IMG/VR virus record: IMGVR_UViG_3300021137_000001
Location: 265,322-329,321 of that record
Strand: one strand, 5' to 3'
Length of the DNA: 64,000 nt
How positions within the stretch are numbered: position 1 is the stretch's first letter; each line of letters begins with the position of its first letter. Shown piece after piece: positions 15,352-64,000 of the stretch. The position numbers and the translations under genes were made by a program. A model generated the notes under the pieces. It searched no databases. It was not told where the DNA came from and was given only the letters and a program-made list of their open reading frames with translations.

Positions 15352-16014
15352 TTATACTGTAGTGCTTAAATTAGTCAGTGTTTGTATGCGCACTGTGTAA
15401 TCAATTTGTATTAGTCTGTTTAGCGATTTTTGCACTGGGCTAAAAATCACGTGTGTTAGTAGTTTACCGAGTCCTTCGCCTGATGCATTAAATCCTTTTA
15501 AACCCAATTCGTCAAATACAAATTGTCCGTTTAAGTCTTGACTGTTATCAAACACTGCTTGCCCATTTGGTTCGCCATAGTCTAATAGACAGCTTATAAT
15601 AATATCACTATAAATTTGTCCCGGTACGTGGGTAATTGAAATTTTATTTCTTAGTGGGTCGCCGTTTGCAGCATTAGTATCATCTACAATTTTGTAGTAT
15701 TGCGGACTATATAAATCAGCATTTTGTACGTTTGTGTTTGTTGGCAAGTATGTAATAACACCAGTTGGATCAACTGTAGTTCCGCCATTACCAAAATGCA
15801 TCTCAGTAATAAAATTATTACCTTTGTTGCCTAAACTTGTAGCAATTGCTTCACTCATATTTTCATAATGAATGGCATTGCGTTTGTTTACAAACACTTC
15901 TTTAGTCTCAGGGTCAAATATTTTAATATGCCCTTGCACACTGATTCCGCCGCGTTCATCGGGTTGTTTAGCTGGCTGTGGTTTAATTATTGATTCTTGC
16001 ATTTTTTTATCCAT
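15352..16014 (-). CDS. Conserved baseplate/tail-fibre attachment protein
   Basis: GHIKIFD...NAIH...FGNGG...FDELGL...THVIFSPVQKS...IDYTVRI pattern resembling fibre-attachment domains; between the wedge and fibre genes. Confidence 0.55.
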   Translation of the reverse strand: MDKKMQESIIKPQPAKQPDERGGISVQGHIKIFDPETKEVFVNKRNAIHYENMSEAIATSLGNKGNNFITEMHFGNGGTTVDPTGVITYLPTNTNVQNADLYSPQYYKIVDDTNAANGDPLRNKISITHVPGQIYSDIIISCLLDYGEPNGQAVFDNSQDLNGQFVFDELGLKGFNASGEGLGKLLTHVIFSPVQKSLNRLIQIDYTVRIQTLTNLSTTV

Positions 16015-16071
16015 ATACTTATTTATTTCATTCCTTTACGACTACTAACAGTTATAGTATTTACCGTATAT

Positions 16072-32125: not shown

Positions 32126-32503
32126 TTAGCGGGCAGTAAGTGTTCTACTTTGATTATCGAATCGAAGATTCATTAAATTAGTTTGATTCGTTTGTAAATA
32201 TCGTAATTCAAGTTCAATTTGTATACCTGTTTCAAACTCTGTAATTACAATATTATCAATAGCAACCCGTGGATCGTAACTAGCAATTGCTTTTACATCT
32301 GCTGCAATGGCACTTCTAAGCGATTCAGTAAATGGATCGTATAATACATTCCAGATAATAGTGCCAAAATTTGGATTCATCAATTTCTCGCCCTTGCGAA
32401 TTTGAAAGTGATTCATTAAGTCTTGTTTAACTAGCTCAAAGTCAGTTAGACGAAACTTTTTGTCGCGTCCAACAGTTGAGAAACCTTTATAGAATATAGC
32501 CAT
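32126..32503 (-). CDS. gp25: Baseplate wedge subunit, gp25-like
   Basis: LVKQDLMNHF..RKGEKLMNPNFGT.IW..L.DP...YDPRV (GPW/gp25 signature). Confidence 0.9.
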   Translation of the reverse strand: MAIFYKGFSTVGRDKKFRLTDFELVKQDLMNHFQIRKGEKLMNPNFGTIIWNVLYDPFTESLRSAIAADVKAIASYDPRVAIDNIVITEFETGIQIELELRYLQTNQTNLMNLRFDNQSRTLTAR

Positions 32504-32511
32504 AATAATAT

Positions 32512-34647
32512 TTATCCTGCTCTAAGTGCTGCTACTTTTGGTGCCATAACTGCAACGGCATATTTTCCTTTTTGGAAGTAACTTTCGCCGGATGTGCCAT
32601 TATTAATATCTGAACCAACTCCTGTACGTGCAAATGTATTTGCTCCACCGGCGCCTAACATATGAGCTGCCATTAGTAATCCACCAATTTCTTCATTTGA
32701 TGTAGAAGTTGTAATTGCTTTTTTAGATACTAATATGTTATAGTTAGATTTAGTAAAGTTAAAAATTGCCTGCTCTTGTATTGCTGGAGTATTAAGAAAC
32801 TTATCTCGACTTAGCCCGCCTAGCCACATTGCATCATTGCCCAAACTTGCAGTGCCTTTACAGTTACTACTAACAAAGCCAGCAGTTTGTAATGCAGCAT
32901 AGCCCATCTGATACTTGCCTAAGAATCCGCATTGATTAATTGCCATATACCCTGCTTGTCCATTTTGTAAGCGTGGAGAATATGACTGTGGTACTTTACA
33001 ATCTACACTCATCGGAGTTGCACCACTACTTTCACTTTTGGCAATTTGCGCTAGCAAAGCAATTACTTCATCTTTGCTTAACGGTCCTATCACACCAAGT
33101 CCATCAGCATTAATTAATTGATCTCTAACATTCGTATCAGTTAGTGTACCCGACACTCCTTTTAACTTTTTATACGCCGGAGTAAAACTAGTATCTGGTG
33201 TGCCCGGTGGAGTTGATACCGGTGCTGTTTCTTCAGTAGCCCTACCTCCACGATTAAATGGTTCGTGAGTCGGTGCTACAGATACAATGGTTGACAATTT
33301 TTCAGATTGAGTGTATAATCCAGTACTACTAAGCGCCACATCAGTTAAACTATTTGGAGTTATTGGTGTCGGTGCAGTAACAGGTGCACCAGCAACTGAA
33401 TTTTGAAGTATTGTTCCGTTTAGTACTAGTTTACCACTTGCATTTATCGATACCGTTGCTGCATCAATATTATATGCACCACCCGATTTAAATTCTATTC
33501 CACTTGCGCCTACACTTAGTTTGCCAGTCGATAGTAGATTAATACCCGCCGCATTAATTTGTAATTTATTGCCTGCGTTTATGTTAATATTATTAGTTGC
33601 ATTAAGATTGATATTAGTATCTGAATGAATATTAACAGTACCCTCACTTCTTACATTAAATCCAGCTTTTGAATATATATGCACTTGCCCATCATTTGAT
33701 AACTCGATCCAACTTGTTCCGTCACTGTGTGCAATATATAAAGTGTTTTGTATATCGTTCATCATTATCTGATGCCCAGTCGCAGTACGTAATCTAATTA
33801 ACTGATCTTCGCCTGTTACACTTCCGTCATCCATGACAAATGTGTGACCTCCTCGACGAGTTGTGTATCTATAATCATCTTCAGTAAGCGTACCTGCATT
33901 TACTTTAGCTAGAAATGCTGCAGGATTATCGGCAGGATCATCATACGGGCGACCTGGGGTACTAATACCAAATACAGTACTTGGACTTTCGCGTTGACTA
34001 CTACTAGAAATTGTGCCGCGAGCAGTATCTCTATCTAGTCCTTGCTTTTTTAATATATCATATTGTGGTTCGTGAATTGGTTTAGGATTACTAAAAAAGT
34101 TTGACTTTTGAGCAATAATAGGATCATTTTCATTAAATTCAACTACCGGAGCATTTGTTCCAGGTTGATATGATTGTTTAGTTGCATCATTTGCTCCAGA
34201 TAAATCAACATTGACGCTACTTGCCAATCCTGGTAACATAGTTCTGCTTATATGTGAGTTAACACACGCAATAAAGTATCCACGCAATGGGTCGCCGCCA
34301 ATAAACATTACAATAACTTCTATACCAACATCAGGCGGAACCATCCACATACCATATGTATGTGGTACATTTCTAAATTTGTTGTCAGTATTAGGTAATT
34401 TATTTGCTGTTTTTGCAATATCTGTTGTACCCATAAATGGGCTTGCATAACTTACAGTACGCCAATTTTGCGGTTCATCAGGATTACCACCAAAGTCCGG
34501 AATCCAAACTTGAAGCCTACCGCAGCGGGTTGGGTCAAGATTATTTTTTACAACCCCTATATACGGATGTGGGTCAACTCTGGTTGCAGCAGCTTCTTCT
34601 TTACGCAACTGTTTACTAACTTTATTACCGACTCTATGATCTAACAT
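32512..34647 (-). CDS. gp5: Baseplate central spike gp5-like with C-terminal lysozyme/transglycosylase-like domain
   Basis: OB-fold GVVKNNLDP..CGRLQVWIP...PPDVG.EV.V.F.GGD; GGHTFVMDDG...GHQIMMND beta-helix; C-terminal KSESSG...N..GFLGKYQMG...AAHMLGAGGA. Confidence 0.8.
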   Translation of the reverse strand: MLDHRVGNKVSKQLRKEEAAATRVDPHPYIGVVKNNLDPTRCGRLQVWIPDFGGNPDEPQNWRTVSYASPFMGTTDIAKTANKLPNTDNKFRNVPHTYGMWMVPPDVGIEVIVMFIGGDPLRGYFIACVNSHISRTMLPGLASSVNVDLSGANDATKQSYQPGTNAPVVEFNENDPIIAQKSNFFSNPKPIHEPQYDILKKQGLDRDTARGTISSSSQRESPSTVFGISTPGRPYDDPADNPAAFLAKVNAGTLTEDDYRYTTRRGGHTFVMDDGSVTGEDQLIRLRTATGHQIMMNDIQNTLYIAHSDGTSWIELSNDGQVHIYSKAGFNVRSEGTVNIHSDTNINLNATNNININAGNKLQINAAGINLLSTGKLSVGASGIEFKSGGAYNIDAATVSINASGKLVLNGTILQNSVAGAPVTAPTPITPNSLTDVALSSTGLYTQSEKLSTIVSVAPTHEPFNRGGRATEETAPVSTPPGTPDTSFTPAYKKLKGVSGTLTDTNVRDQLINADGLGVIGPLSKDEVIALLAQIAKSESSGATPMSVDCKVPQSYSPRLQNGQAGYMAINQCGFLGKYQMGYAALQTAGFVSSNCKGTASLGNDAMWLGGLSRDKFLNTPAIQEQAIFNFTKSNYNILVSKKAITTSTSNEEIGGLLMAAHMLGAGGANTFARTGVGSDINNGTSGESYFQKGKYAVAVMAPKVAALRAG

Positions 34648-39558: not shown

Positions 39559-40236
39559 ATGACAACTTATTATGTATATGCATATATTCGTAGCAAAACT
39601 TCGCTAACTGCTAGCATCGGCACCCCGTATTATATAGGTAAAGGAATAGGGCAACGTGCGTTTACTAAACATAATTGTCCAGTTCCGATAGATAAAACAA
39701 ATATTTTGTTTATTAAAGAAAATTTAACAGAAATTGACGCACATTTATTAGAAATACAGCTCATAGAACAATATGGGAGAAAAGATTTAGGCAACGGAAT
39801 ATTACATAATCAAACGAATGGCGGAGAAGGCATAAGCAATCCATCTAGCACTACTAGAGAAAAAATGGCGGCTGCTAAAAGAAATGAATCCGCTGATACT
39901 AGATTAAAACGATCAATTGCAGCAAAGAATAGAATCCGCACACCACTTAGCGATGAAACAAAACGTAAGATTAGCGAGGCTAATACAGGTAAAAAAAGAA
40001 CAGACGATGCTAAATTAAAGCAGTCGGTTGCTAAGAAAGGTAGAACGTGGGAAGATATTTTTGGTATCGAAGAGGCAGCTAGAAGAAGGGATATACTTGC
40101 AAGTGACGAAGTTAAGTTAAAAATGAGTATAGCTGCGTGTAACAGAAGTGACGAAGGTGCCGCCAATATAGCTGAAGCAAATAGGAAAATTGGTATATTA
40201 AGAAAAGAAGCAAATAACAAATTAAAGGGTGTATAA
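39559..40236 (+). CDS. Free-standing GIY-YIG homing endonuclease with NUMOD3-like repeats
   Basis: YYVYAY...PYYIGKG..RA...E..LI..YGRKD...L.N.T.GGEG; SDETKRKISEA.TGK. Confidence 0.88.
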   Translation: MTTYYVYAYIRSKTSLTASIGTPYYIGKGIGQRAFTKHNCPVPIDKTNILFIKENLTEIDAHLLEIQLIEQYGRKDLGNGILHNQTNGGEGISNPSSTTREKMAAAKRNESADTRLKRSIAAKNRIRTPLSDETKRKISEANTGKKRTDDAKLKQSVAKKGRTWEDIFGIEEAARRRDILASDEVKLKMSIAACNRSDEGAANIAEANRKIGILRKEANNKLKGV

Positions 40237-40239
40237 TAT

Positions 40240-41139
40240 ATGGCAAGACGTGTGAACTATTTGAATAATAAAGACATTTTAAAAGAAATCGCTAAAAGTA
40301 AATTAACATATTGTAGTTTCATTAATAAAGATGTAACTATGTACGATGCTATTGTATTAAACGTAAGTGCAATTACTAAAAAATCCGTAGCAGAAGCCAG
40401 AGCAACAAGAGCAACAAGGCTTGCTAAAGAAGCACAAGAAGCTGAATTATTGCTCGGTAACAAACGCAAGTTAGATGAATTTGCAATCCCAGTAGAAAAT
40501 ATCCCAGTAACAGACATTGTATTCCGTGTTATGACATGGGAACATATACCAATCGACGAAGTTAAACAGAAAAAATCCGACGCTAAAGCACAAGAAGCGT
40601 ACGACGAAGATTTGTTCGAAACTGAATACGATGAGCCTGCACCAGTTGTTAAAGTCAAAGGTGCTGTTAAGTACGTTAAACTAAACTTTCCTCCTTTCTT
40701 TCATTATTCAGTAACCGAAGACTTAACTCCAATTGTTGTTGGTAAGAGTCACTGGAAAGGCGACTTTGAAACTGGCGGTTTTGTTAAAGATCATGGTAGC
40801 ATGACGGCTAAGTTAGCTCATATGTTTGTTAAACTATGTGAACGCTATGCTACACGTAGTAACTGGCGTGGTTATACATACAATGACGAGATGCGTAGCC
40901 AAGCATTACTTCAATTAAGTCAAATTGGGCTACAGTTTGACGAAAGTAAATCAGACAATCCATTTGCTTATTATACAGCCGCAATTACAAACAGCTTTAC
41001 TCGTGTATTAAACATCGAAAAGCGCAATCAAAATATTCGTGATGACATTTTAGAGATGAACAACTACGCACCAAGCTATACTCGACAGAATCAAGGCGGT
41101 AACTGGGGCGGTGGTGGTGGACACGGAGCCGACGAATAA
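40240..41139 (+). CDS. gp55: Late-transcription sigma factor, T4 gp55-like
   Basis: VNYLNNKDIL; L..R...RSNWRGYTYNDEM...AL...FDE.KS.NPFAYYT....NSF.R.L..EKR. Confidence 0.88.
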   Translation: MARRVNYLNNKDILKEIAKSKLTYCSFINKDVTMYDAIVLNVSAITKKSVAEARATRATRLAKEAQEAELLLGNKRKLDEFAIPVENIPVTDIVFRVMTWEHIPIDEVKQKKSDAKAQEAYDEDLFETEYDEPAPVVKVKGAVKYVKLNFPPFFHYSVTEDLTPIVVGKSHWKGDFETGGFVKDHGSMTAKLAHMFVKLCERYATRSNWRGYTYNDEMRSQALLQLSQIGLQFDESKSDNPFAYYTAAITNSFTRVLNIEKRNQNIRDDILEMNNYAPSYTRQNQGGNWGGGGGHGADE

Positions 41140-41201
41140 CCGCAAATTATTTTATCTGCCAGTCGCCCATAACTAAATACATTTACAGGGGATTGGCAGA
41201 T

Positions 41202-41864
41202 ATGAAATACAAAAAAGATTACTATGGTTATGTATATGAATGGATAAATTCCACTAATAATATGAAATATATCGGATCGCATTACGGAGCAGTCGATGAT
41301 TATTATAAAGGATCCGGCAAAGATTTTATGGTAGCATATAAAAATAACCCACAACACTTTACTATGAGAGTATTAGAATATGTTTCTGAAAACAATAAAA
41401 AATTAGTATTAGAAACAGAAAAAAAATGGCTTGATACAGTAGTAAATATTAAAGATGATCCAACATATTATAATCTCAATAATGATGCGACAGGCGGATT
41501 TGGGTATTTAGATGAATCTCATATCGTTAAACGAGCAGAAACATTAAAGAAGAAACACGCTATCCACGGATTAAGTACCGAAGAAATACAATCATATAAG
41601 CAAAAAATACAAACCAGACTCGATAGAATAGCAACTACTGGGTTTACCGATAAAGAAAAAGAACAACATGCAAAATACGGAATTAAATTACAAGTCACCT
41701 TACCCTCAGGAGAAGTACGAATATATAATTCCATCGGGGCTGCCGAACGTGAGTTAAAACTTAACATTAAGTATGGATTAAAAATATGTGCCAAAAAACT
41801 TGACTTCAAAGGGTACATTCTAGTAAAATTAAATGAACCACTAATCGATTGTAGGAAAAAATGA
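41202..41864 (+). CDS. Free-standing GIY-YIG (Seg-like) homing endonuclease
   Basis: YGYVYEWIN..N.MKYIGSH...DDYYKGSG...E...L...YYNL; C-terminal NUMOD1-like YNSIGAAEREL. Start moved to the ATG after RBS GGGGA (track gives 41193). Confidence 0.85.
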   Translation: MKYKKDYYGYVYEWINSTNNMKYIGSHYGAVDDYYKGSGKDFMVAYKNNPQHFTMRVLEYVSENNKKLVLETEKKWLDTVVNIKDDPTYYNLNNDATGGFGYLDESHIVKRAETLKKKHAIHGLSTEEIQSYKQKIQTRLDRIATTGFTDKEKEQHAKYGIKLQVTLPSGEVRIYNSIGAAERELKLNIKYGLKICAKKLDFKGYILVKLNEPLIDCRKK

Positions 41865-42874
41865 ATTTATTCAAAAAAGCTGCGGTATTTACAGATTTAC
41901 ATCTAGGACTAAAGTCAAATAGTACACAACATAATGAAGATTGCCTTGCGTACATTAAATGGTTTATTAGTAATGCAAAAAAAGAAGGGTGCGATGTTTG
42001 CTTTTTTCTTGGAGACTATCATAATAATCGAGCGGCAATTAATGTAGTCACGTTAAACTATAGCCTAACAGCGTTAGAGTTGTTGGGCAAAGCGTTTGAC
42101 CGTGTTATCTTTATTCCGGGCAATCATGATTTATATTATCGTGACAAGCGTGATATACAATCTGCACAATGGGCAAAGCATATTCCAAACATTGAGATTA
42201 TTAATGATTTCTATCAAGAGGGTGATGTAAGCATTGTTCCGTGGCTAGTAGGAGATGATCATAAAAAGATACAAAAGATCAATGCAAAGTATATGTTCGG
42301 GCACTTTGAGTTACCGGGCTATTATATGAATGCAATGGTGCAAATGCCAGAGCACGGTGAGATTAGACGTGAGGATTTTGGGCATATTGATCATGTGTAC
42401 AGTGGGCATTTTCATAAACGTCAAACAGGTAAGAATATTACATATATTGGCAATGCGTTTCCACATAATTATGCAGATGCAGGTGATGATGAACGTGGTA
42501 TGATGATACTTAACTGGGGAGAAGAGCCAACGTTTCATGCATGGCCTGATCAACCCAAGTATCGTGTATACACACTAAGCGACATTTTGCAAACTCCAGA
42601 TACGTTGTTACAAAAAGGTATGCACTGTCGAGTAAACATCGACGTGGATATTTCATATGAAGAAGCAACATTTATTAAAGAAACTTTTGTAGGTACATAT
42701 AATTTGCGTGAGCTTACATTAATTCCAGTAAAGCACACTGATATCGGCACAGATATTATGCTAGGCAATATTCAATTCGAAAGTATTGATACAATCGTGA
42801 CAAGTCAACTAACAGCTATCAACAGTGAGCATTATAATCCAGCATTGTTATTAGACATCTATAGGAATTTATAA
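41861..42874 (+). CDS. gp47: Recombination nuclease subunit, gp47/Mre11/SbcD-like
   Basis: Metallophosphoesterase motifs DLHLG, GDYH, GNHD, GHFE, SGHFH. Confidence 0.93.
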   Translation: MNLFKKAAVFTDLHLGLKSNSTQHNEDCLAYIKWFISNAKKEGCDVCFFLGDYHNNRAAINVVTLNYSLTALELLGKAFDRVIFIPGNHDLYYRDKRDIQSAQWAKHIPNIEIINDFYQEGDVSIVPWLVGDDHKKIQKINAKYMFGHFELPGYYMNAMVQMPEHGEIRREDFGHIDHVYSGHFHKRQTGKNITYIGNAFPHNYADAGDDERGMMILNWGEEPTFHAWPDQPKYRVYTLSDILQTPDTLLQKGMHCRVNIDVDISYEEATFIKETFVGTYNLRELTLIPVKHTDIGTDIMLGNIQFESIDTIVTSQLTAINSEHYNPALLLDIYRNL

Positions 42875-42910
42875 TTGTTTAAAATAAAAAATCTTACAGT
42901 TAACAGGTAA
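42875..42910 (+). pseudogene. Fossil 5' fragment of gp46 (MFKIKNLTVNR*)
   Basis: TTG TTT AAA ATA AAA AAT CTT ACA GTT AAC AGG TAA abuts the gp47 stop; 14-bp ATAAAAAATCTTAC shared with 43542-43555. Confidence 0.7.
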
Positions 42911-42939
42911 ATGTATAAATAGTTATATAGGAGTAATAT

Positions 42940-43530
42940 ATGGCTAAAAGAAGAATATTTACAGAGGACGAATTGAATTTAATCATTGATTTACAACGGT
43001 CGGTTACTGAGATATGCTTACTAGTTAGTGCATCACATCCAACAATAACTAAGATCAGAAAAGAGGTAGGTATCGTTACTATTAGAGGTAGGAGAGGTGG
43101 GTCTGTTGTTCCGTCTCAACGAAGAACTATTTACTGTGTATGCCAGAATGCGGCGTGTAAAAAAGAATTCGAATCAATAAAATCAACTCCTCGTAAATTT
43201 TGTAGCCACACGTGCCAACAACGAGCTGCAAATGTTGCTGCAAAAGGAATCGGTTCAAGAAAAATGCGTAACCCTAACACTCCTGTATATAAAAAATATG
43301 CTAGAATAGTACATGGGATGAGTCATAAGATATATTTGTCAAACATAGCTATTATTAACCCTAATGGATATGTTAGAACATTATGCGGAGTTAAAGATGG
43401 ATGGCAATTAGATCATATCATTCCTATTAAGGAATGTTTTGAAAGAAATATACCCCCAGAAGAGGCAGCTAGTATTAATAATCTTAGGATGCTTCCATGG
43501 AAAGATAATTTAATGAGACAATATAAATAA
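42940..43530 (+). CDS. HNH endonuclease (N-terminal HTH and Zn-finger, C-terminal HNH)
   Basis: C..AACKKEF...RKFCSHTC; WQLDHIIP...NLRMLPWKDN; own TATAAATA at 42914-42921 and AGGAG RBS. Confidence 0.8.
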   Translation: MAKRRIFTEDELNLIIDLQRSVTEICLLVSASHPTITKIRKEVGIVTIRGRRGGSVVPSQRRTIYCVCQNAACKKEFESIKSTPRKFCSHTCQQRAANVAAKGIGSRKMRNPNTPVYKKYARIVHGMSHKIYLSNIAIINPNGYVRTLCGVKDGWQLDHIIPIKECFERNIPPEEAASINNLRMLPWKDNLMRQYK

Positions 43531-45302
43531 TGGCATTCCGTATAAAAAATCTTACCGTGAAAAATTTCATGAGTGTTGGTAATGCAACGCAAGCAGTGGA
43601 CTTTGATCGCAATGATCTCACGTTAGTGCTTGGTGTCAATGTTGATTTAGGTGGTGACGACAGCGGCGCACGTAACGGCACTGGTAAAACAACTATCATC
43701 AATGCGTTAAGCTACAGTTTGTTTGGGCAAGCGTTGACTAATATTAAACGTGATAACTTAATTAATAAAACTAATGGTAAGAACATGTTAGTCACAGTTG
43801 AGTTCGAACATAACGGGCAAGATTATAAGATTGAGCGTGGACGTAAGCCAAACGTAATGAAGTTTTACGTGGGTGATGAAGAAAAAGAAATTACAGACGA
43901 ATCGCAAGGTGATAGCAGAGAAACGCAAGCTGAGATTGAGCGTATGTTAAGCATGAAGCATGATATGTTTAAACACATTGTTGCTCTTAACACGTACACT
44001 GAACCGTTCCTTAGTTTAAAGTCGGGTGATCAACGTGAGATCATCGAGCAGCTACTCGGTATTACTATGCTTAGTGAAAAGGCTGAGAATTTAAAAGAGT
44101 TGACTCGTGCTACAAAGGATGCAATTCAGCAAGAAGAATACAGTATTAAGGCGATTGCAGACGCAAACGGACGCATAAAAGAACAAATTGAGAGCTTAAT
44201 TCGTCGACAAAATATGTGGACTACTAAGCACACAGATGATGCAGCAAAGTTAGAAAATGCGTTAGCAGAGTTGCATAAAATTGATATTGAACAAGAACTT
44301 GCAGCACACACTGCGCTTACTGCATATAATCAACAGCGCAAAGACTTAGATGATTTGGGTAAAGCTATATTGCGTGGTGAGGCAGATATTGCTCGCGAAC
44401 AAAAAACTATAGACAAAGTTACTAAAGAAATTGCCGATTTAGAAGCGCACACTTGCTATGCTTGCGGGCAACATTTTCATGATGATAAACATGAGTCGGT
44501 ATTAGCGGCTAAACGTGTTTCACTTGAAACCGCAACAAATCAATATTTGTCAGATCAATCACAGTTGCTTGCACTTACTGGTGCTAAGGCAGAAATTGGT
44601 GCCCTTGGTGCACAACCTCGAGTATATTATGATAAAGAAGCAGATGCATTCCATCATAAAGGTTCAATTACTAGTTTAGAAACACAGTTAGCAACTAAGA
44701 GTGCGGAAGTTGACCCATATGCTGAACAGATTGAAGAAATGACGCATACTGCTATGGCAGAAACTGATTTTACTACAATGAATGAGCTCGTTAAGTTAAA
44801 GGAACATCAAGACTTCTTGTTAAAACTATTAACTAACAAAGATAGCTTTATCCGTAAGCGTATTATTGATCAGAACTTGTCGCATCTAAACGCAAGATTA
44901 AGTCAATACTTAGATCGCATCGGATTGCCACACACAGTAACGTTCTTAAATGATTTAAGCGTTGAAATTACAGAGCTTGGGCGCGAGTTAGACTTTGATA
45001 ATTTATCACGTGGTGAACGTAATCGCTTGATCTTAAGTTTAAGCTGGGCGTTCCGTGATGTGTGGGAGAGTTTATACAATCCGATTAACTTATTGTTTAT
45101 TGATGAGCTTATTGATAGTGGCATGGACAGTAGCGGAGTTGAAAGTTCACTAGGCATACTTAAAAAGATGTCGCGTGAACATGAGAAAAGTATTTGGCTT
45201 GTTTCGCACAAAGACGAACTTGCGGGTCGTGTAAACAATATCATGACTGTAACAAAAGAGAATGGGTTTACTACATACAGCACCGACGTTGAAGTAATTT
45301 AA
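43530..45302 (+). CDS. gp46: Recombination ATPase subunit, gp46/Rad50/SbcC-like
   Basis: Walker A RNGTGKTT, coiled coil with CYAC Zn-hook, signature LSRGE, Walker B LLFIDE, H-loop VSH. Confidence 0.93.
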   Translation: MAFRIKNLTVKNFMSVGNATQAVDFDRNDLTLVLGVNVDLGGDDSGARNGTGKTTIINALSYSLFGQALTNIKRDNLINKTNGKNMLVTVEFEHNGQDYKIERGRKPNVMKFYVGDEEKEITDESQGDSRETQAEIERMLSMKHDMFKHIVALNTYTEPFLSLKSGDQREIIEQLLGITMLSEKAENLKELTRATKDAIQQEEYSIKAIADANGRIKEQIESLIRRQNMWTTKHTDDAAKLENALAELHKIDIEQELAAHTALTAYNQQRKDLDDLGKAILRGEADIAREQKTIDKVTKEIADLEAHTCYACGQHFHDDKHESVLAAKRVSLETATNQYLSDQSQLLALTGAKAEIGALGAQPRVYYDKEADAFHHKGSITSLETQLATKSAEVDPYAEQIEEMTHTAMAETDFTTMNELVKLKEHQDFLLKLLTNKDSFIRKRIIDQNLSHLNARLSQYLDRIGLPHTVTFLNDLSVEITELGRELDFDNLSRGERNRLILSLSWAFRDVWESLYNPINLLFIDELIDSGMDSSGVESSLGILKKMSREHEKSIWLVSHKDELAGRVNNIMTVTKENGFTTYSTDVEVI

Positions 45303-45357
45303 TTTTACCATCCACTACAGGGTGGTTAAATACATATAACAACAAGGAGAAGTAAAC

Positions 45358-45543
45358 ATGGCAATTCATGATGATATTTTAGCAGCAGTAGAATTATACG
45401 TTTCAGAATCAGAAAAATTTGAAGTTAAAGGTGTTAAAGCTGCAGCGGCACGTGCTCGCGGTGCATTAGGCGATTTAGGTAAGTTAACTAAAGCTCGTCG
45501 TGCAGAAATTCAAACCAAAAAGAACGAACTGTCCGCTAAGTAA
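45358..45543 (+). CDS. Small basic protein resembling histone H1-like Hc1 family DNA-binding proteins
   Basis: KF..KGVKAAAARAR.AL..L.KL.K..R.EIQ pattern; AAGGAG RBS; TAAATA at 45327-45332. Confidence 0.6.
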   Translation: MAIHDDILAAVELYVSESEKFEVKGVKAAAARARGALGDLGKLTKARRAEIQTKKNELSAK

Positions 45544-45634
45544 TAACGGAAAATGCTGACATTTTGAATAAATAGTAGTGTAGTTCGCGGGTGTAGGAAC
45601 CCCAACTACTCTAACATTGTAAAGGAATGTCAGC

Positions 45635-46213
45635 ATGAATATTTATTACGTATACCAGTACCTTAGAGAAAAGGATTCGTCTACTGCTCTAGCAGGTACA
45701 CCATACTATATAGGAAAAGGTAAGAACAACCGAGCATATATAGGACACAATAATAGAATACCTTCAAATAAAGAATATATTCAAATTATTAAAGATAATT
45801 TAACTGAACAAGAAGCAATGGACCTTGAAATTATGCTAATTAAAAAATATGGTCGTAAAGATTTAGTAACAGGTATTTTAATAAATCTTTCAAACGGCGG
45901 CGAAGGAGCAAGCGGATCTGTTCGTTCGCAAGAGCACAAGACACGTATATCTCAAGCACAAACAGGAAAAATTGTTTCAGATTCAACAAGAGAAAAATTA
46001 AGTAAGGCATTATCAGGTAAAAAACGATCAGATATTGCTAAGTTTAATATTAGCAAAGCACACATAGGTCAAGTTCCTTGGAATAAAAACATACAAATGA
46101 CAGAAGAGTGGAAGGCAAAACGCCCTTGGCATAGTTGTGATATTTGTGGTATTCAATCCCAAAACCTTACTAATATTAAAAGATTTCACAATAGCAATTG
46201 TAAAAATAAATAG
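45635..46213 (+). CDS. Free-standing GIY-YIG homing endonuclease (paralog of 39559..40236)
   Basis: YYVYQY...GTPYYIGKG...YGRKD..GIL.N...GGEG; NUMOD3-like repeats; C-terminal CDIC..H..C. Confidence 0.88.
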   Translation: MNIYYVYQYLREKDSSTALAGTPYYIGKGKNNRAYIGHNNRIPSNKEYIQIIKDNLTEQEAMDLEIMLIKKYGRKDLVTGILINLSNGGEGASGSVRSQEHKTRISQAQTGKIVSDSTREKLSKALSGKKRSDIAKFNISKAHIGQVPWNKNIQMTEEWKAKRPWHSCDICGIQSQNLTNIKRFHNSNCKNK

Positions 46214-46217
46214 CATT

Positions 46218-46670
46218 ATGGCATATGATAATCCCTGGATCTATAATGGTACAACTTTTGATTCAGGGGATATCGGTGAATACTACGGCTTCATTTATAG
46301 AATAACTAATATCACTAACGGACACGATTATGTGGGCCGCAAATATTTTAAAACTATTAAAAAAAGACCACCACTAAAAGGTAAGAAGAACAAACGTTTA
46401 GAAACAATTGAAACTGATTGGAAAGACTATTGGGGTTCATCAAATCGTTTAGTAGCAGATATACTAGCACTAGGTAAAGAACAGTTTACCCGTGAAATTA
46501 TACATTTATGTAAAAGTCGCGGTGAAACTAACTATATGGAAGCGCATTATCAATTTAAAGAAGAAGTACTGTTAAGGGAAGATAACTATAATGGTATTAT
46601 ACAACTTAAACTAGGTAAAAACTCCGTTAAAGATGTAAAAATTAATAAATCAGTTGACCAACGACACTAA
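46218..46670 (+). CDS. Compact GIY-YIG nuclease without DNA-binding repeats
   Basis: W.YNG...YGFIYRITN..NG..YVGRK...ETDWKDYWGSS...FTREII.LC...YN. Start at MAYDNPW, following TAAATA-N5 (track gives 46137). Confidence 0.8.
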   Translation: MAYDNPWIYNGTTFDSGDIGEYYGFIYRITNITNGHDYVGRKYFKTIKKRPPLKGKKNKRLETIETDWKDYWGSSNRLVADILALGKEQFTREIIHLCKSRGETNYMEAHYQFKEEVLLREDNYNGIIQLKLGKNSVKDVKINKSVDQRH

Positions 46671-46682
46671 ACGTAATACAAT
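46654..46682 (+). promoter_or_regulatory. Sigma70-type promoter facing the endonuclease and structured RNA region
   Basis: TTGACC-17 nt-TACAAT. Confidence 0.55.
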
Positions 46683-46792
46683 AAACACATAACTCACACA
46701 GACACCAAGTCGCTCTCATAGAAACAAATTCCAACTCCGTAATAAAGTAGTAAATGTTTTAACCGCAGGTGGAACAAGTGATAAATAACTGT

Positions 46793-47467
46793 ATGAACTA
46801 TACCGAATTAATCACCGAAGAAATACGTAGTAAATTTAAACCCACTTGGCTTTATATTAAGCAACACAATGATACAGGATTACAGTATTTTGGTAAGACT
46901 ATTGTAGCAGATCCATTTAAATATAAAGGATCAGGCACTAGATGGTTATATCATTTAAACTTACATCATAATAATGTAACCACAGTCTGGTGTAAGTTAT
47001 TCACAGATGTTGATCAATTAGTAGCATACGCTATTGATTTTTCGCTTAATAATAATATTGTAGAATCAGATAAGTGGGCAAATTTAATTATTGAAAATGG
47101 GTTAGATGGAGGAACAACACCATCCGACTGTACTAAAGAAAAAATGAGATTAGCGAATACTGGTAGAAAATATTCAGAAGAAACAAAACAAAAAATTAGA
47201 GCCACAAAGGCAAATTATGTAATAACAGAAGAGACTAGAAAAAAAATGTCACTTGCCCAAAAAGGCAGAATAGTTTCAGAAGAAACAAAACAAAAATTAA
47301 AAAGAACTAATACCGGCAAAAAACACCACATTAGTTCAATCGAAAAGATGAAGGTTAGTAGAAGTGAAGTTGTTTATAAATCGGTTGTTTGCCCGCATTG
47401 TGGTAAAGAAGGCGCAATAAACAATATGCCTAGATATCATTTTGATAAATGTAAGGCTAAGAAATAA
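46793..47467 (+). CDS. Free-standing GIY-YIG homing endonuclease with NUMOD3 repeats and C-terminal Zn motif
   Basis: LYIKQH..TGL.YFGKT..DP..Y.GSG..W; NL..ENGLDGG; SEETK.K repeats; CPHCGKEG...HFDKC. Start at the ATG after TAAATA-N5 (track gives 46769). Confidence 0.85.
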   Translation: MNYTELITEEIRSKFKPTWLYIKQHNDTGLQYFGKTIVADPFKYKGSGTRWLYHLNLHHNNVTTVWCKLFTDVDQLVAYAIDFSLNNNIVESDKWANLIIENGLDGGTTPSDCTKEKMRLANTGRKYSEETKQKIRATKANYVITEETRKKMSLAQKGRIVSEETKQKLKRTNTGKKHHISSIEKMKVSRSEVVYKSVVCPHCGKEGAINNMPRYHFDKCKAKK

Positions 47468-53922: not shown

Positions 53923-53941
53923 CAGTTAGATAAATAATACT

Positions 53942-54166
53942 ATGAACTTACTTGAAATGTTTAATGATGATATAGAACTAGGTCACCGCACTGAAGAGGA
54001 GGACAATACACCTCTTAAACTAAGTGATCTACGTAAAACTAAATTAACATTAACACAATTACATCGTTTACGAATTATGAATGATGTACGCAGACTAGAG
54101 AAAGAACAAGATTTAGAAAGAGTAAGAAGTCAATACAAACCGGCGGAAGTTGCACCACCGATGTAG
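53942..54166 (+). CDS. Small head-morphogenesis protein (hypothetical)
   Basis: Between the portal and core genes; N-terminal LLE; TAAATA-N5-ATG. Confidence 0.65.
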   Translation: MNLLEMFNDDIELGHRTEEEDNTPLKLSDLRKTKLTLTQLHRLRIMNDVRRLEKEQDLERVRSQYKPAEVAPPM

Positions 54167-54293
54167 TTATCAATCAGAATCAATCAAAAAACACGCATTT
54201 AACTTCAATTTTTCAATAAACCAGTAAATAATATTACAGAGATAATACATTGATGTATATCTCACCTAGACACACATTTTAAGGAGTTCTTTT

Positions 54294-55133
54294 ATGAACA
54301 AGTATGAACAGTTAATAGAACATATCATTAATGACGAAACAGATAAAGCTCGCGAATTATTCCACAACATCGTTGTTGAAAAATCACGTGACATTTACGA
54401 GTCATTAGTTGACGAGTCAGATTTAGAAGAAGTTGGCGGTAACCCAGTTAAAAGTTTCCGTAACGAAGTTGAACTTGACGAGCAAGGTATCACTGAAGAA
54501 GAATTTGACGGCGAAGAAGAATTTGGCGCTGAAGAAGAATTTGACGGCGAAGAAGACGAAGGCGGCGAAAGTGATTTCGACAACGGCGGCGAATTTGACG
54601 GTGAAGAACAAGGCGAAGCTGAAATCGAAGATCGCGTAGTTGATCTTGAGTCTGCACTAGACGAACTTAAAGCTGAATTTGATGCTTTAATGTCTGGTGA
54701 AGAAAATGAGCCAGAACACGCTGACATGTTCGGTGGTGAAGAAGAAAATGAATTTGACGGCGAAGAAGCTGGCGAATTTGATGGTGAAGAAGAAAACGAA
54801 TTTGGTGAATCAATTGTACGTGAATACGTAGAAAAAGTTGCTGCACCGAGCAAAACTGAAGGCGGCGAAGTTGGTCGTGGCGGTTCTGTATCAGTAAACA
54901 AACAATCTACAGTTGCTAAAAAGAATGATATGGGTGGAACATCATCTAATATCGCTCGTGGCGGTGTAGCAGTTGGCGGTAAATCTGCTCCAAAAGGTCG
55001 TTTGATTGGTGATGTACAAAATACAGCTGGTGGTTCAAAGAAACTATCATCAGTAAGTAAACCAGCAGGTGCAGAAGGCCAAACAACTGACGGTAAATTG
55101 CCAGTTGCAACTAAAAGCCCGTTAGCACGTTAA
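54294..55133 (+). CDS. Acidic prohead core/internal protein
   Basis: Very Glu-rich with EFDGEEE repeats; immediately upstream of the prohead protease; AAGGAG RBS. Confidence 0.7.
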   Translation: MNKYEQLIEHIINDETDKARELFHNIVVEKSRDIYESLVDESDLEEVGGNPVKSFRNEVELDEQGITEEEFDGEEEFGAEEEFDGEEDEGGESDFDNGGEFDGEEQGEAEIEDRVVDLESALDELKAEFDALMSGEENEPEHADMFGGEEENEFDGEEAGEFDGEEENEFGESIVREYVEKVAAPSKTEGGEVGRGGSVSVNKQSTVAKKNDMGGTSSNIARGGVAVGGKSAPKGRLIGDVQNTAGGSKKLSSVSKPAGAEGQTTDGKLPVATKSPLAR

Positions 55134-55146
55134 TTAGGACAAAATC

Positions 55147-55788: not shown

Positions 55789-55797
55789 GAGATCAGT

Positions 55798-58124: not shown

Positions 58125-58150
58125 AAAAAAGCCCCGCAAGGGGCTTTTTT
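58125..58150 (+). terminator. Intrinsic terminator after the major capsid gene (potentially bidirectional)
   Basis: AAAAAA-GCCCC-GCAA-GGGGC-TTTTTT. Confidence 0.92.
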
Positions 58151-58154
58151 GTGG

Positions 58155-58202
58155 TTGACAATAACATAAAAATATGTTATATTTGTTAATTCGGTATAAA
58201 TA
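58155..58202 (+). promoter_or_regulatory. Sigma70-type promoter plus late promoter for the HNH gene
   Basis: TTGACA-17-TATATT (58155-58183), then TATAAATA (58195-58202) 5 nt before the ATG. Confidence 0.6.
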
Positions 58203-58207
58203 CTATT

Positions 58208-58957
58208 ATGAACAAATATAAAAATTGGTATAATTCTATTATTGCTACCGCAACACATAGAATATTAACTACATATACAGAAAAACATCACATCATTCCA
58301 CGTAGTCTCGGTGGAGATGACAGTTCCACTAATCTTGTTGATTTAACTGCTCGTGAACATTTTATATGTCATTGGCTATTAACTAAAATACATACTGATT
58401 CTGCAAAATATCTTATGCTTAATGCATTACAAGGTATGCGCCGCCAAAATAAAAATCAACAACGATACAAAACAAAAATTACCGCAAGAGTATATGCTAA
58501 TCTTAAAGAAGAATGGGGATTACTATCGTCTGAACGTATTAAAGGCGACAAAAATCCTATGTGGGGTAAACATCATACAGCCGAAGCCAAAGAATTAATC
58601 CGGCAAAAGAATTTAGGTAATAAAATAACAGATGAACAACGTGCTAAAATATCGGCATCTCAGACTGGCAAAAAGCGTAAACCGTTTAGTGAAGAATGGA
58701 AAGCAAAATTATCAGCATCGGGATCGGGCAAAAATAATAGTATGTACGGTAAAACACACTCTGATGAAACTAAAGCTAAACAACGTGAACGTGCTATCGG
58801 TCGCAAACAATCAGCTGAAACTATTACTAAAAAGGCAGATGCAAATAGAGGTAAAACTCGTGAGAAACTATTATGCCCGCATTGTAGTAAACTTATAGCA
58901 GTAAATACCTATCCCCGTTGGCACGGTAAAAATTGTAAATTATATACAGAACACTAA
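58208..58957 (+). CDS. Free-standing HNH homing endonuclease with NUMOD3 repeats (paralog of 48090..48836)
   Basis: YTEKHHIIPRSLGG.D...NLV.LTAREHFICHWLL; NPMWGKHHT; NSMYGKTHS; CPHC...WH..NC. Confidence 0.88.
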   Translation: MNKYKNWYNSIIATATHRILTTYTEKHHIIPRSLGGDDSSTNLVDLTAREHFICHWLLTKIHTDSAKYLMLNALQGMRRQNKNQQRYKTKITARVYANLKEEWGLLSSERIKGDKNPMWGKHHTAEAKELIRQKNLGNKITDEQRAKISASQTGKKRKPFSEEWKAKLSASGSGKNNSMYGKTHSDETKAKQRERAIGRKQSAETITKKADANRGKTREKLLCPHCSKLIAVNTYPRWHGKNCKLYTEH

Positions 58958-63149: not shown

Positions 63150-63289
63150 CCGCTCACTTAGTTTTTATTAAACTAATACTAAATACATATAACAAACTGT
63201 GCCAGCCCAGGGAATATGGAACCGCCGCTACCATTCAGTTTATGCAGTAGAATACTAAACTAATAACAATATGCGGAGCATTACATCAG

Positions 63290-64000
63290 ATGGCAAATCT
63301 AACCAGAATTAAGAACAACCAGATCACAGACTCGACAATCCTTGCTAATACCAAGATTGTTCCAGGATCTATAGTAGGATCATTATTCAATAGTTCGCTG
63401 ACTATTGCAAGTGATATTACAATTACAGGTAACTTGACAGTACAAGGCTCTAGTAGCTACCTTACAGTTGCATCAACAAACACATACGTAAACGATCCAT
63501 TAATTGTATTAAACAATGCATTTAGTGGTACTAATACATATGACATTGGTTTGTTATTTAATCGTGGCAATCAAACAACAACTGCTCTAGTTTGGGAAGA
63601 AACTGCTAAAGAATTCCAACTAACCTACACAACAGATAATGGTACTACTTACGGTGCAATTAACAACAGTGGTTATGCTAACTTAAAAGTTGGTAACTTA
63701 ACAGTTGCTACAGCATCTACTTTAGGTAGTTTGGCTGTTACTGGTAATATTAGTGCATGGTACGGTACATTAAGTGGTAACTTATTAATTGGTGGCGGAG
63801 CATTAACTGCGAACACTGCAACGTTTGATTTATTAAACTCTACAGTAACTACATTAAACTTCGGTGGTGCAGCAACTACAGCAAACGTTGGTGCTGGAAG
63901 CGGTACTATTACTATTAACAACCCAACATTAGTTGGACAACAAGCAACACAAGCATTGTATAATACCGTTGCAACTACAATGAACTTTGCTGGTGCTGCA
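63290..64000 (+). CDS. Tail fibre-like virion protein, partial (runs off window)
   Basis: Not in the ORF track. GGAG RBS then ATG at 63290: MANLTRIKNNQITDSTILANTKIVPGSIVGSLFNSSLTIASDITITGNLTVQG...; open to the window end. Confidence 0.8.
   Translation, partial: MANLTRIKNNQITDSTILANTKIVPGSIVGSLFNSSLTIASDITITGNLTVQGSSSYLTVASTNTYVNDPLIVLNNAFSGTNTYDIGLLFNRGNQTTTALVWEETAKEFQLTYTTDNGTTYGAINNSGYANLKVGNLTVATASTLGSLAVTGNISAWYGTLSGNLLIGGGALTANTATFDLLNSTVTTLNFGGAATTANVGAGSGTITINNPTLVGQQATQALYNTVATTMNFAGAA

What the first reader, a model, noticed from the sequence alone, without database searches (positions are those of the whole stretch)
46207..46220. Recurrent TAAATA-N5-ATG: a class of apparently leaderless late mRNAs
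Seen: exactly 5 nt, ending in T, separate TAAATA from the start ATG, with no Shine-Dalgarno between. This occurs at 46218 (gcatt), 46793 (actgt), 53942 (atact), 58208 (ctatt), minus 32503/gp25 (ttatt), minus 16014 (agtat) and, with the variant TAATTA, minus 10295 (ctatt). In several leadered genes the same position is also an A preceded by T (42927, 45338, 54236, 63191). Inference: +1 is the sixth base after the hexamer, so these genes start at the first nucleotide of their mRNA. This is unlike typical T4 late genes and hints at a host that translates leaderless mRNA well.
Basis: partly seen in the sequence, partly recalled or inferred. Interest (0 to 1): 0.65.

Follow-up and report, generated by a model that had tools for sequence, protein, structure and literature searches.

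The report
Late promoters fused to start codons
In this 329-kb freshwater T4-like jumbo phage, about 17 genes (mostly homing endonucleases plus a few virion proteins) have the late-promoter box TAAATA exactly 5 bases before their ATG and no ribosome-binding site. Their late mRNAs therefore probably begin at the start codon, and the same layout is conserved across uncultured relatives and in the cultured SAR11 phage HTVC008M.

Summary
TAAATA-N5-ATG occurs 8 times in the window against 2.9 expected. In the 329-kb genome it occurs 27 times against about 7 at neighbouring spacings (Poisson 6e-9). No spike appears for GTG or TTG, or for any one-base variant of the hexamer. Seventeen sites head real genes. 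All 17 have T at -1 and ATG as start, and 16 of 17 lack a Shine-Dalgarno (SD) sequence. Other TAAATA-led genes have it 16-26 nt upstream with an SD in between, and spacings 8-12 are almost empty. A gp55-type late sigma factor is encoded in the window. Three sites sit just behind intrinsic terminators and three head divergent units. The arrangement is kept in 77 of 77 gp25 orthologues and 71 of 78 post-portal genes in related metagenomic phages, although the spacer sequence drifts. The best reading is leaderless late mRNAs, but no transcription start was mapped. Ten of the 17 genes are unrelated homing-endonuclease-like genes. I propose that the fusion restricts their translation to transcripts started at their own late promoter. 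Of 14 cultured phages checked, only Pelagibacter phage HTVC008M shares the feature.

The parts
46207..46220 (+). TAAATA-N5-ATG heading the 150-aa GIY-YIG-like homing-endonuclease-type gene 46218-46670 (the flagged site). The TAG stop of the upstream endonuclease gene (45635-46213) lies inside the box.
   Evidence: phrog_447 7e-41, protein residue 2 aligned to profile position 5. About 20 related loci keep aaaTAAATA-N5-ATG before the MxYxYPWTYNG orthologue with different spacers.
46782..46795 (+). TAAATA-N5-ATG heading homing-endonuclease-like gene 46793-47467 (224 aa)
   Evidence: (phrog_314 and phrog_655, about 7e-12)
53931..53944 (+). TAAATA-N5-ATG heading the 74-aa gene 53942-54166 just after the portal gene. 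Its PA5oct orthologue is annotated as a structural protein found by mass spectrometry.
   Evidence: TAAATA is present in 78 of 78 related loci, at N5 in 71 of 78, with 27 different spacers.
58197..58210 (+). TAAATA-N5-ATG heading homing endonuclease gene 58208-58957 (249 aa)
   Evidence: (phrog_655 7e-50)
58131..58150 (+). Intrinsic terminator (GCCCC-GCAA-GGGGC followed by six T) after the major capsid gene, 46 nt upstream of the 58197 box. It should stop read-through into the endonuclease gene.
32501..32514 (-). TAAATA-N5-ATG heading gp25-like baseplate wedge gene 32126-32503. The TAA of the box is the stop codon of the upstream 711-aa gene.
   Evidence: phrog_43 6e-15, residue 5 aligned to profile position 5; 77 of 77 informative orthologous loci keep the exact spacing
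16012..16025 (-). TAAATA-N5-ATG heading the 220-aa gene 15352-16014, annotated as a structural or baseplate protein in relatives
   Evidence: phrog_11259 4e-70; N5 in 27 of 80 loci, N4 or N6 in 14 more
40240..41139 (+). gp55-type late sigma factor gene (299 aa), the presumed reader of TAAATA
   Evidence: phrog_12791 4e-79; phrog_234 8e-23; phmmer 2.5e-12 to HTVC008M gp55
42916..42942 (+). Example of the leadered class: TAAATA, predicted +1 A at 42927, GGAG, ATG at 42940
45327..45360 (+). Leadered example: TAAATA, predicted +1 A at 45338, AAGGAG, ATG at 45358
54225..54296 (+). Leadered example with a long leader: TAAATA, predicted +1 A at 54236, AAGGAG, ATG at 54294
63180..63292 (+). Leadered example with a long leader: TAAATA, predicted +1 A at 63191, ATG at 63290

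Best explanation
TAAATA (mostly ATAAATA) is the late promoter of this phage, read by host RNA polymerase carrying the phage's gp55-type sigma factor. As in T4, transcription should start at the sixth base after the box. In about 17 genes that base is the A of the ATG, so the late transcript is a leaderless mRNA with a 5'-terminal AUG, translated without a Shine-Dalgarno sequence. All other genes with a nearby TAAATA carry the shortest workable leader instead. It is 11-21 nt long and often begins with the SD itself.

Inferred function: the ATG has no SD, so it should be read poorly on read-through transcripts coming from upstream. It becomes an efficient start only when it is the 5' end made by its own late promoter. 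Promoter and start codion fused in 14 bp therefore form a minimal, portable, late-only expression cassette. That would explain why 10 of the 17 genes are unrelated free-standing homing-endonuclease genes. A few small virion genes (gp25, the 74-aa post-portal protein, a 69-aa virion protein, a baseplate protein) use the same device.

Shown: motif, spacing statistics, absence of SD, ATG-only starts, T at -1, terminator and divergent contexts, conservation, presence of gp55. Inferred: the position of the transcription start, leaderless translation, and the gating role.
For: - Spacing: there is a sharp spike at N5 only (27 against 6.9). For genes the distribution is bimodal, with 17 at N5 and about 50-60 at 16-26. 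Only 4 sites lie at 8-12, and 2 of them are alternative pairings or internal starts.
- Specificity: no spike for GTG or TTG, and no real ORF behind TAAATA-N5-GTG or -TTG. No spike for any one-base variant of the hexamer.
- Base at -1: T in 17 of 17 genic sites, against 32% at all predicted starts. In related loci the base is always a pyrimidine. This fits the pyrimidine(-1)/purine(+1) rule for transcription starts.
- SD 4-mers: found in 1 of 17 leaderless sites, 33 of 55 leadered TAAATA genes, 48% of all genes and 6.5% of random positions.
- Sigma factor and geometry: a gp55 homologue lies in the window. T4 numbering places the box at -13 to -6 (PMC2988020).
- Context: canonical terminators lie 8-46 nt upstream of the box at G000 73866, G000 147833 and window 58208. 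Three sites head divergent units and have no same-strand upstream gene.
- Conservation with drifting spacer sequence: gp25 in 77 of 77 loci; post-portal gene in 71 of 78 at N5, with the rest at N4-N8.
- Homing endonucleases: 10 of 33 endonuclease-like genes are leaderless, against 8 of the other ~360 genes (odds ratio about 17, p = 3e-7 on the first-pass set of 36). The set was refined to 33. The 10 are mutually unrelated or under 44% identical over parts.
- Independent cultured case: in HTVC008M, 12 of 14 sites are annotated CDS starts. These include two divergent genes whose start codons are 26 bp apart, a gap filled by two back-to-back boxes.
- 5' ends of the leaderless genes are slightly less structured than those of other genes (p = 0.03).
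Against: - No transcript 5' end has been mapped. The metatranscriptome contigs do not cover 53800-53999 or 58200-58999 and cannot show ends in any case.
- Seven of the 17 sites lie 4-26 nt behind an upstream same-strand gene. At gp25 the TAA of the box is that gene's stop codon, so termination-reinitiation could translate these genes without a leaderless mRNA.
- At gp25 the conserved GGA before the box could act as a distant SD.
- A good sigma-70-like promoter (58155-58183) could give the 58208 gene an 18-nt SD-less leader early in infection.
- No gp33 or gp45 homologue was detected with the queries used.
- The gp55 homologue is 299 aa against 185 aa in HTVC008M gp55, so the start-site distance could differ from T4's.
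- The closest cultured relatives (Vibrio phage 2.275.O, PA5oct, 121Q) lack the feature and use an SD at the orthologous post-portal gene.
Confidence: 0.62

Rival explanations
1. Translational coupling on polycistronic late mRNAs. The genes are read by ribosomes that terminate just upstream and reinitiate at a nearby SD-less ATG. TAAATA is either an internal promoter serving downstream genes or partly a stop-codon context, and the tight spacing reflects genome compaction rather than a 5'-terminal AUG.
For: Seven of the 17 sites have 4-26 nt between the upstream same-strand ORF and the ATG. The TAA of the box is the upstream stop at gp25 and at three HTVC008M sites (7551, 11961, 142349). SD-less coupled homing-endonuclease genes are known in T4 (PMC2988022).
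Against: Coupling does not need an invariant ATA after the stop, an exact N5 spacing or T at -1. Ten of the 17 sites have gaps of 57-812 nt or no same-strand upstream gene. Three sit behind terminators. The HTVC008M divergent pair cannot be coupled. Spacings 0-4 and 6-12 are not enriched.
Confidence: 0.2
2. The arrangement reflects the host. The phage infects a bacterium whose ribosomes translate leaderless mRNA especially well, and that is why the class exists.
For: The only cultured phage that shares the feature infects SAR11, an alphaproteobacterium. Relatives that infect enterobacteria, Vibrio and Pseudomonas lack it.
Against: Most genes of this phage use strong canonical SDs. The phage's bS21 gene is closest (56-62% identity) to those of Burkholderiales MAGs. 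To my knowledge that group is not known for abundant leaderless genes. Phages of Caulobacter and Sinorhizobium showed no excess, but two of them had no matches at all and may use another late motif. Leaderless AUG mRNAs are translated in all bacteria tested (established knowledge).
Confidence: 0.12
3. TAAATA-N5 acts in the RNA as an A/U-rich, SD-independent translation enhancer (for example a site for ribosomal protein S1) just upstream of the AUG, not as a promoter at these sites.
For: The element is A/U-rich and lies directly 5' of the AUG. Such enhancers exist in E. coli (established knowledge).
Against: An enhancer would not require an exact hexamer, an exact 5-nt spacing and a pyrimidine at -1. 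The same hexamer sits 16-26 nt upstream of SD-led starts, where it behaves as a promoter box. Sites behind terminators would have no mRNA carrying the element.
Confidence: 0.04
4. Chance co-occurrence in an AT-rich genome, or wrongly chosen start codons.
For: Nine or ten of the 27 genome matches are background, preceding ORFs of 3-46 codons or a doubtful internal ATG.
Against: Poisson 6e-9. Shuffles and reversed-pattern controls argue against chance. Protein N-termini are conserved from Met1 in orthologues. Profile alignments begin at residues 2-5. GenBank annotators independently called 12 of 14 such ATGs as starts in HTVC008M.
Confidence: 0.02

Closest known systems
Phage T4 late promoters (TATAAATA read by gp55, with gp33 and gp45)
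   Same: The core box is the same and no -35 element is conserved. The downstream segment is AT-rich, with a purine at the sixth base after the box in 12 of the 15 forward-strand T4 sites. A gp55 homologue is present. The box precedes virion genes.
   Different: T4 late mRNAs carry SD-containing leaders. The only N5 match in T4 is not a gene start. Here positions -13 and -12 are relaxed, and gp33 and gp45 were not detected. ATAAATA was already predicted as the late motif in the related phages CBB and GAP32 (PMC5259590), but without any mention of fusion to start codons.
Late-only translation of T4 homing endonucleases (I-TevI, I-TevII, I-TevIII, segB; Aeh1 mobE)
   Same: The endonuclease gene has its own late promoter immediately upstream. 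Translation is meant to occur only from the late-promoter transcript and not from read-through early or middle transcripts (PMC2988022).
   Different: In T4 an SD is present and is sequestered by a hairpin that forms only on the longer transcripts. Here there is no SD and no hairpin requirement, and the discrimination would come from the AUG being 5'-terminal or internal. The proposed logic is the same but the mechanism differs.
Classical leaderless mRNAs (lambda cI from PRM, Tn1721 tetR; abundant in Actinobacteria, Deinococcus-Thermus and archaea, and in some of their phages)
   Same: 5'-terminal AUG, no SD, strict need for AUG rather than GUG or UUG, and a promoter -10 element at a fixed short distance from the start codon (my own knowledge; Brock et al. 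2008 is cited in PMC5312081).
   Different: Those use sigma-70-type or host promoters. Here a phage-specific late sigma would make a whole temporal class. No paper in the searched library describes this for T4-like phages.
Pelagibacter phage HTVC008M (cultured T4-like pelagiphage)
   Same: It has TAAATA-N5-ATG 14 times against 4 for the control. Twelve are annotated CDS starts (a baseplate wedge subunit, the putative tape measure, the DNA end protector, head closure, tail completion and others), with a pyrimidine at -1 in 11 of 12. It also has a leadered class with SD at 18-30 nt, and it encodes gp55 and bS21.
   Different: It is a 147-kb marine phage with a different host. Its leaderless class is mostly structural genes, not homing endonucleases. 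I found no paper that reports the feature.

Membership tests
T4-type gp55-dependent late promoter | Conserved TATAAATA-like box about one helical turn upstream of the start, with no -35 element | tested here: met
   TAAATA is invariant and -12 is A in 14 of 17 leaderless and 28 of 49 leadered sites. Position -13 is not conserved, and nothing is conserved from -25 to -14. One-base variants are not enriched.
T4-type gp55-dependent late promoter | Phage encodes a gp55-family sigma factor | tested here: met
   Window 40240-41139: phrog_12791 4e-79 and phrog_234 8e-23; phmmer 2.5e-12 to HTVC008M gp55
T4-type gp55-dependent late promoter | Precedes late (virion) genes | tested here: met
   The box lies upstream of the portal gene, gp25, the baseplate and giant structural genes, the post-portal virion protein and others
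T4-type gp55-dependent late promoter | Co-activator gp33 and sliding clamp gp45 | tested here: inconclusive
   phmmer and tblastn with HTVC008M gp33-like, Syn9 gp33-like and HTVC008M gp45 gave no hit. The same absence is reported for the related phage CBB (PMC5259590). Remote homologues could be missed.
T4-type gp55-dependent late promoter | Transcription starts at the sixth base after the box, late in infection | not testable with these tools
   The only RNA data are metatranscriptome contigs that do not cover the sites
Leaderless mRNA | Transcript 5' end coincides with the A of the AUG | not testable with these tools
   Inferred from T4 geometry (PMC2988020) and sequence context only
Leaderless mRNA | AUG only (GUG and UUG not tolerated) | tested here: met
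   17 of 17 are ATG. There is no N5 spike for GTG or TTG and no real ORF behind them, whereas several leadered genes use GTG or TTG.
Leaderless mRNA | No Shine-Dalgarno sequence; -10-type element at a fixed short distance from the start codon | tested here: met
   SD 4-mer in 1 of 17 sites against 33 of 55 leadered genes; spacing is exactly 5
Leaderless mRNA | Protein really begins at that ATG | tested here: met
   N-terminal residues are conserved from Met1 in 77 gp25 orthologues and 78 post-portal orthologues. Profile alignments start at residues 2-5. In 12 of 17 the ATG is the first possible start in the open frame. No proteomic confirmation exists for this phage.
I-TevI-type hairpin gating of homing-endonuclease translation | SD present and sequestered by a hairpin that forms only on transcripts from upstream promoters | tested here: not met
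   No SD is present at the 10 leaderless endonuclease genes. The proposed logic is the same, but this is not a member of that mechanism.

The most novel reading that the evidence does not exclude
A lineage of aquatic T4-like phages (a large freshwater jumbo clade and, independently, the SAR11 phage HTVC008M) has turned the gp55 late promoter into a combined transcription and translation start signal. Promoter and AUG are fused, so that translation of these genes depends on initiation at their own late promoter. Diverse homing endonucleases have adopted this 14-bp cassette as a portable, self-limiting expression module. Late-expressed phage ribosomal protein bS21 might further tune ribosomes between SD-led and leaderless starts.
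Probability: 0.3. Interest if true: 0.75.

Novelty: new variant of a known kind. Interest (0 to 1): 0.58.

Why it matters
- It would add a temporal class of leaderless mRNAs to the T4 superfamily, whose late transcription is a textbook system in which late mRNAs are thought to be SD-led.
- It offers a very simple way for selfish endonuclease genes, and for small virion genes inside operons, to be translated only when their own late promoter fires.
- It gives gene callers a rule for start codons in these phages. Several of these ORFs extend upstream to GTG or TTG codons that a longest-ORF caller would pick.
- Because the cultured HTVC008M / Pelagibacter HTCC1062 pair shows the same architecture, the idea can be tested directly.

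Tried and rejected
- RNA evidence. Public runs were searched. Four freshwater metatranscriptomes were laid on 53000-58999. Only contigs were available, mostly from 90-95% relatives, and they covered the protease, scaffold and capsid genes. Nothing covered 53800-53999 or 58200-58999, and contigs cannot show ends. The result is uninformative and does not count against the claim.
- Cultured relatives. Vibrio phage 2.275.O, PA5oct and 121Q show no excess, and they have an SD at the orthologous post-portal gene. T4, KVP40, Syn9, P-SSM2, S-PM2, Cr30, phiM12, Phosso and SCTP-2 show no excess, and Atu_ph07 shows at most a weak one. Cr30 and phiM12 had no matches at all and may use a different late motif.
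- Duplication artefact. The 10 leaderless endonuclease genes are mutually unrelated or only partly similar, so this was rejected.
- TAATTA, or any other one-base variant, as a second box. There is no enrichment.
- Link to phage bS21. This phage and HTVC008M both encode bS21, but so does PA5oct, which has no leaderless excess. bS21 is therefore not a sufficient correlate.
- Host identification. The search for homologous proteins on bS21 returned no organism names. The genome-contig scan points to Burkholderiales at only 56-62% identity, which is a hint and not an assignment.
- Divergent back-to-back boxes like those in HTVC008M. None were found in this genome or in the fetched loci.
- Literature. 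No paper in the searched library combines leaderless mRNAs with T4-type late promoters. The Syn9 transcription-start study was not found in the library.
Full report
WHAT THE WINDOW IS. The window is bases 265322-329321 of a 329,321-bp IMG/VR phage record with direct terminal repeats. GC content is 37%. It carries T4-type core genes: portal (52213-53922), prohead protease (55147-55788), major capsid protein (56923-58098), gp25 (32126-32503, -), gp46/gp47-like nuclease subunits, and a gp55-type late sigma factor (40240-41139; phrog_12791 4e-79, phrog_234 8e-23). The capsid protein is 62-67% identical to those of Vibrio phage 2.275.O, Sinorhizobium phage Phosso, PA5oct and 121Q/PBECO4, that is, the RaK2-like jumbo myoviruses. 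DNA of this phage occurs in freshwater and lake metagenomes. Hundreds of related IMG/VR contigs exist, with 70-98% portal identity.

THE OBSERVATION. TAAATA-N5-ATG occurs 8 times in the window against 2.9 expected. It occurs 27 times in the genome against 8 for the reversed-pattern control. In the genome-wide histogram of distances from TAAATA to any ATG, spacing 5 holds 27 sites and the neighbouring spacings average 6.9 (Poisson 5.7e-9). A second, broad hump lies at 17-23. None of the other 14 permutations of the hexamer shows such a spike (ATAAAT has 23 at spacing 6, the same sites read one base earlier).

Seventeen of the 27 matches head real genes, and 12 of them are the first possible start codon in their open frame. 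The other matches precede ORFs of 3-46 codons or a doubtful internal ATG, which is about the number expected as background.

ANATOMY OF THE TWO CLASSES. I made a simple codon-usage gene call (394 genes, 91% coding). With it, TAAATA boxes near gene starts fall into two groups. Seventeen lie at exactly N5, and about 50-60 lie at 16-26 nt. Only 4 sites lie at 8-12 nt, and 2 of them are alternative pairings or internal starts.
- The N5 class has T at -1 in 17 of 17, against 32% at all predicted starts, although the search pattern did not require it. It uses ATG in 17 of 17. It has an SD-like 4-mer in only 1 of 17; the exception is gp25, where AGGA comes from the last codons of the upstream gene.
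- The long-spacing class has an SD 4-mer in 33 of 55 and a GGA/GAG/AGG triplet in 50 of 55. The random expectation is 6.5% and 22%. The SD often begins at the predicted +1, which shows as an AAG excess at spacing 5. These leaders are therefore about as short as an SD-led mRNA can be.
- The box is usually ATAAATA. Position -13 and everything further upstream are not conserved.

T4 numbering puts the 8-mer at -13 to -6; PMC2988020 writes 'A(-13) in place of T'. A fixed -10-type box, a pyrimidine at -1, a purine at +1, AUG-only starts, no SD, and an avoided zone of leaders too short to hold an SD together form the expected signature of leaderless genes. Part of this is established knowledge, and Brock et al. 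2008 is cited in PMC5312081.

CONTEXT THAT ARGUES FOR A 5'-TERMINAL AUG. Canonical intrinsic terminators sit just upstream of three boxes. One lies 8 nt upstream at G000 73866 and one 14 nt upstream at G000 147833. The third is GCCCC-GCAA-GGGGC plus six T at window 58131-58150, after the capsid gene and 46 nt before the 58197 box. Three further sites (G000 10811-, 45727-, 133584+) head divergent units and have no same-strand gene upstream. In these six cases translation by coupling to an upstream ORF is impossible or unlikely, and there is no room for a leader between box and ATG. The first 30-40 nt of the leaderless genes are slightly less structured than those of other genes (p = 0.03).

CONSERVATION.
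- gp25: in related IMG/VR contigs, the orthologue (68-100% aa identity) keeps TAAATA-N5-ATG in 77 of 77 informative loci, with nine or so different spacers.
- 74-aa post-portal gene: TAAATA is present in 78 of 78 loci. It lies at N5 in 71 and at N4, N6 or N8 in the rest. There are 27 different spacer sequences, and -1 is always a pyrimidine.
- Orthologue of the flagged 46218 gene: it keeps aaaTAAATA-N5-ATG in about 20 loci, with spacers that differ at almost every position.
- 220-aa baseplate-type gene: N5 in 27 of 80 loci and N4 or N6 in 14 more.
- Five large contigs of the clade together hold 51 matches against 20 for the control.

Spacing and box are therefore under selection, while the spacer sequence is not. 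In the more distant cultured relatives the orthologous post-portal gene has a normal GGAG, and there is no genome-wide excess. The state has evidently switched during evolution.

WHICH GENES. Ten of the 17 are homing-endonuclease-like genes of several families (GIY-YIG, HNH, endonuclease VII-like; phrog_314, 655, 447, 7168, 5104, 1035). The genome holds about 33 such genes. The enrichment has an odds ratio of about 17 and p = 3e-7, computed on the first-pass set of 36, which was refined to 33. The ten are mutually unrelated or share under 44% identity over parts, so this is not one duplicated cassette. The other seven are:
- gp25;
- the post-portal protein, whose PA5oct orthologue is a virion protein by mass spectrometry;
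- a 69-aa virion-protein homologue;
- the baseplate-type 220-aa protein;
- three genes of unknown function.

MECHANISM PROPOSED. Shown: the sequence architecture and its conservation. Inferred:
(a) gp55-RNA polymerase starts at the A of the ATG.
(b) The resulting 5'-AUG mRNA is translated without an SD.
(c) On longer read-through transcripts the same ATG is internal and SD-less, and so is read poorly. Translation therefore depends on firing of the gene's own late promoter.

T4 reaches the same end for I-TevI, I-TevII, I-TevIII and segB, as does Aeh1 for mobE, by a different means. There an SD is hidden in a hairpin that forms only on the longer transcripts (PMC2988022). The leaderless fusion would be a simpler, 14-bp, portable equivalent, which is attractive for mobile endonuclease genes inserted between early or middle genes such as 46/47/55 here. 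For the small virion genes, it may simply add an internal late start in a tightly packed operon.

RIVALS.
- Termination-reinitiation is a genuine alternative or addition for the seven sites that lie 4-26 nt behind an upstream ORF. At gp25 the TAA of the box is that ORF's stop codon. It does not explain the invariant ATA, the exact spacing, T at -1, or the terminator and divergent contexts.
- An RNA-level A/U enhancer is contradicted by the same facts.
SD use is strong. The phage's ribosomal protein bS21 gene (G000 99896-100132; PF01165 6e-16) is closest, at 56-62% identity, to Burkholderiales and betaproteobacterial MAGs, which is only a weak host hint.
- Chance is excluded by the controls.

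COMPARISON WITH KNOWN SYSTEMS. ATAAATA was already predicted as the late motif of the related phages CBB and GAP32 (PMC5259590), so the promoter itself is not new. In T4 the listed TATAAATA..ATG pairs have SD leaders. The single N5 case lies between genes 31 and rIII and is not a gene start. Of 14 cultured phages checked, only Pelagibacter phage HTVC008M shows the excess, with 14 matches against 4 for the control. Twelve of the 14 are annotated CDS starts, including a baseplate wedge subunit, the putative tape measure, the DNA end protector, head closure and tail completion genes. Two divergent genes there have start codons only 26 bp apart, and that gap is filled by two back-to-back boxes. 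That arrangement leaves no space for any leader and is the strongest single piece of support for the interpretation. I found no paper that describes leaderless late mRNAs in T4-like phages. The library is incomplete, and the Syn9 start-site study was not in it.

LIMITS. No transcription start, protein N-terminus or expression timing was measured for this phage. The one RNA look used assembled contigs, mostly from 90-95% relatives, which did not cover the sites. My gene calls are home-made. gp33 and gp45 were not found. The gp55 homologue has a long N-terminal extension, so start-site geometry is assumed from T4.

VERDICT. The leaderless reading is the best-supported explanation (about 0.6), and the host inference is not supported. 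The homing-endonuclease enrichment, the clade-wide conservation and the HTVC008M parallel are new facts that make the idea more interesting and directly testable. I class it as a new variant of known kinds (T4-type late promoter plus leaderless mRNA), of moderate to good interest.

Noticed in passing
window 39559-47467 and 58208-58957; genome-wide (G000): The genome carries about 33 homing-endonuclease-like genes, roughly 8% of all genes. Seven lie in the window, interleaved with gp55, gp47 and gp46 (39559, 41193, 42940, 45635, 46218, 46793, 58208). Eighteen of the 33 have their own TAAATA box: 10 leaderless and 8 leadered.
   Followed up: partly
window 45602-45616 (+); G000 237432, 246487, 240032, 69522, 69149, 59087 and others: A second recurrent motif, CCAACTACTCTAACA followed by AAGGA and an ATG, precedes a subfamily of endonuclease-like genes that lack TAAATA. 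There are 10 copies with up to 2 mismatches against 1 for the control. It could be another promoter type or part of the mobile cassette.
   Followed up: partly
G000:C1:99896-100132 (outside the window; locus L276 97-333): The phage encodes ribosomal protein bS21 (PF01165, 6e-16), preceded by TAAATA at N23 plus an AAGGA SD, so it is probably a late gene. Its closest bacterial homologues (56-62%) are in Burkholderiales and betaproteobacterial MAGs. PA5oct and HTVC008M also encode bS21.
   Followed up: partly
window 58155-58183 (+): A near-consensus sigma-70-type promoter (TTGACA, 17 nt, TATATT, with a TG extension) lies between the capsid-gene terminator and the late box of the 58208 endonuclease gene. 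It would give an SD-less leader of about 18 nt, so the gene may have dual early and late control.
   Followed up: no
window 16072-28662 (-): A giant 4196-aa ORF sits next to the baseplate genes, with TAAATA 26 nt upstream of its ATG. The identical terminator GCCCC-GCAA-GGGGC plus T-run recurs at window 58131-58150 and upstream of G000 147833.
   Followed up: no
Pelagibacter phage HTVC008M, NC_020484 (loci L273-L275), e.g. 18914-18945: This cultured pelagiphage has the same leaderless-type late architecture: 12 annotated CDS starts at TAAATA-N5-ATG, and two divergent genes separated by 26 bp that consist of two back-to-back boxes. A thirteenth site at 142681-142694 precedes an unannotated ATG upstream of phoH and out of frame with it.
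   Followed up: yes
window 55400-58000: Lake metatranscriptome contigs 90-99% identical to the protease, scaffold and capsid genes exist in four public runs. DNA carry-over in these libraries was not ruled out, but they suggest that phages of this clade are being expressed in freshwater lakes.
   Followed up: partly
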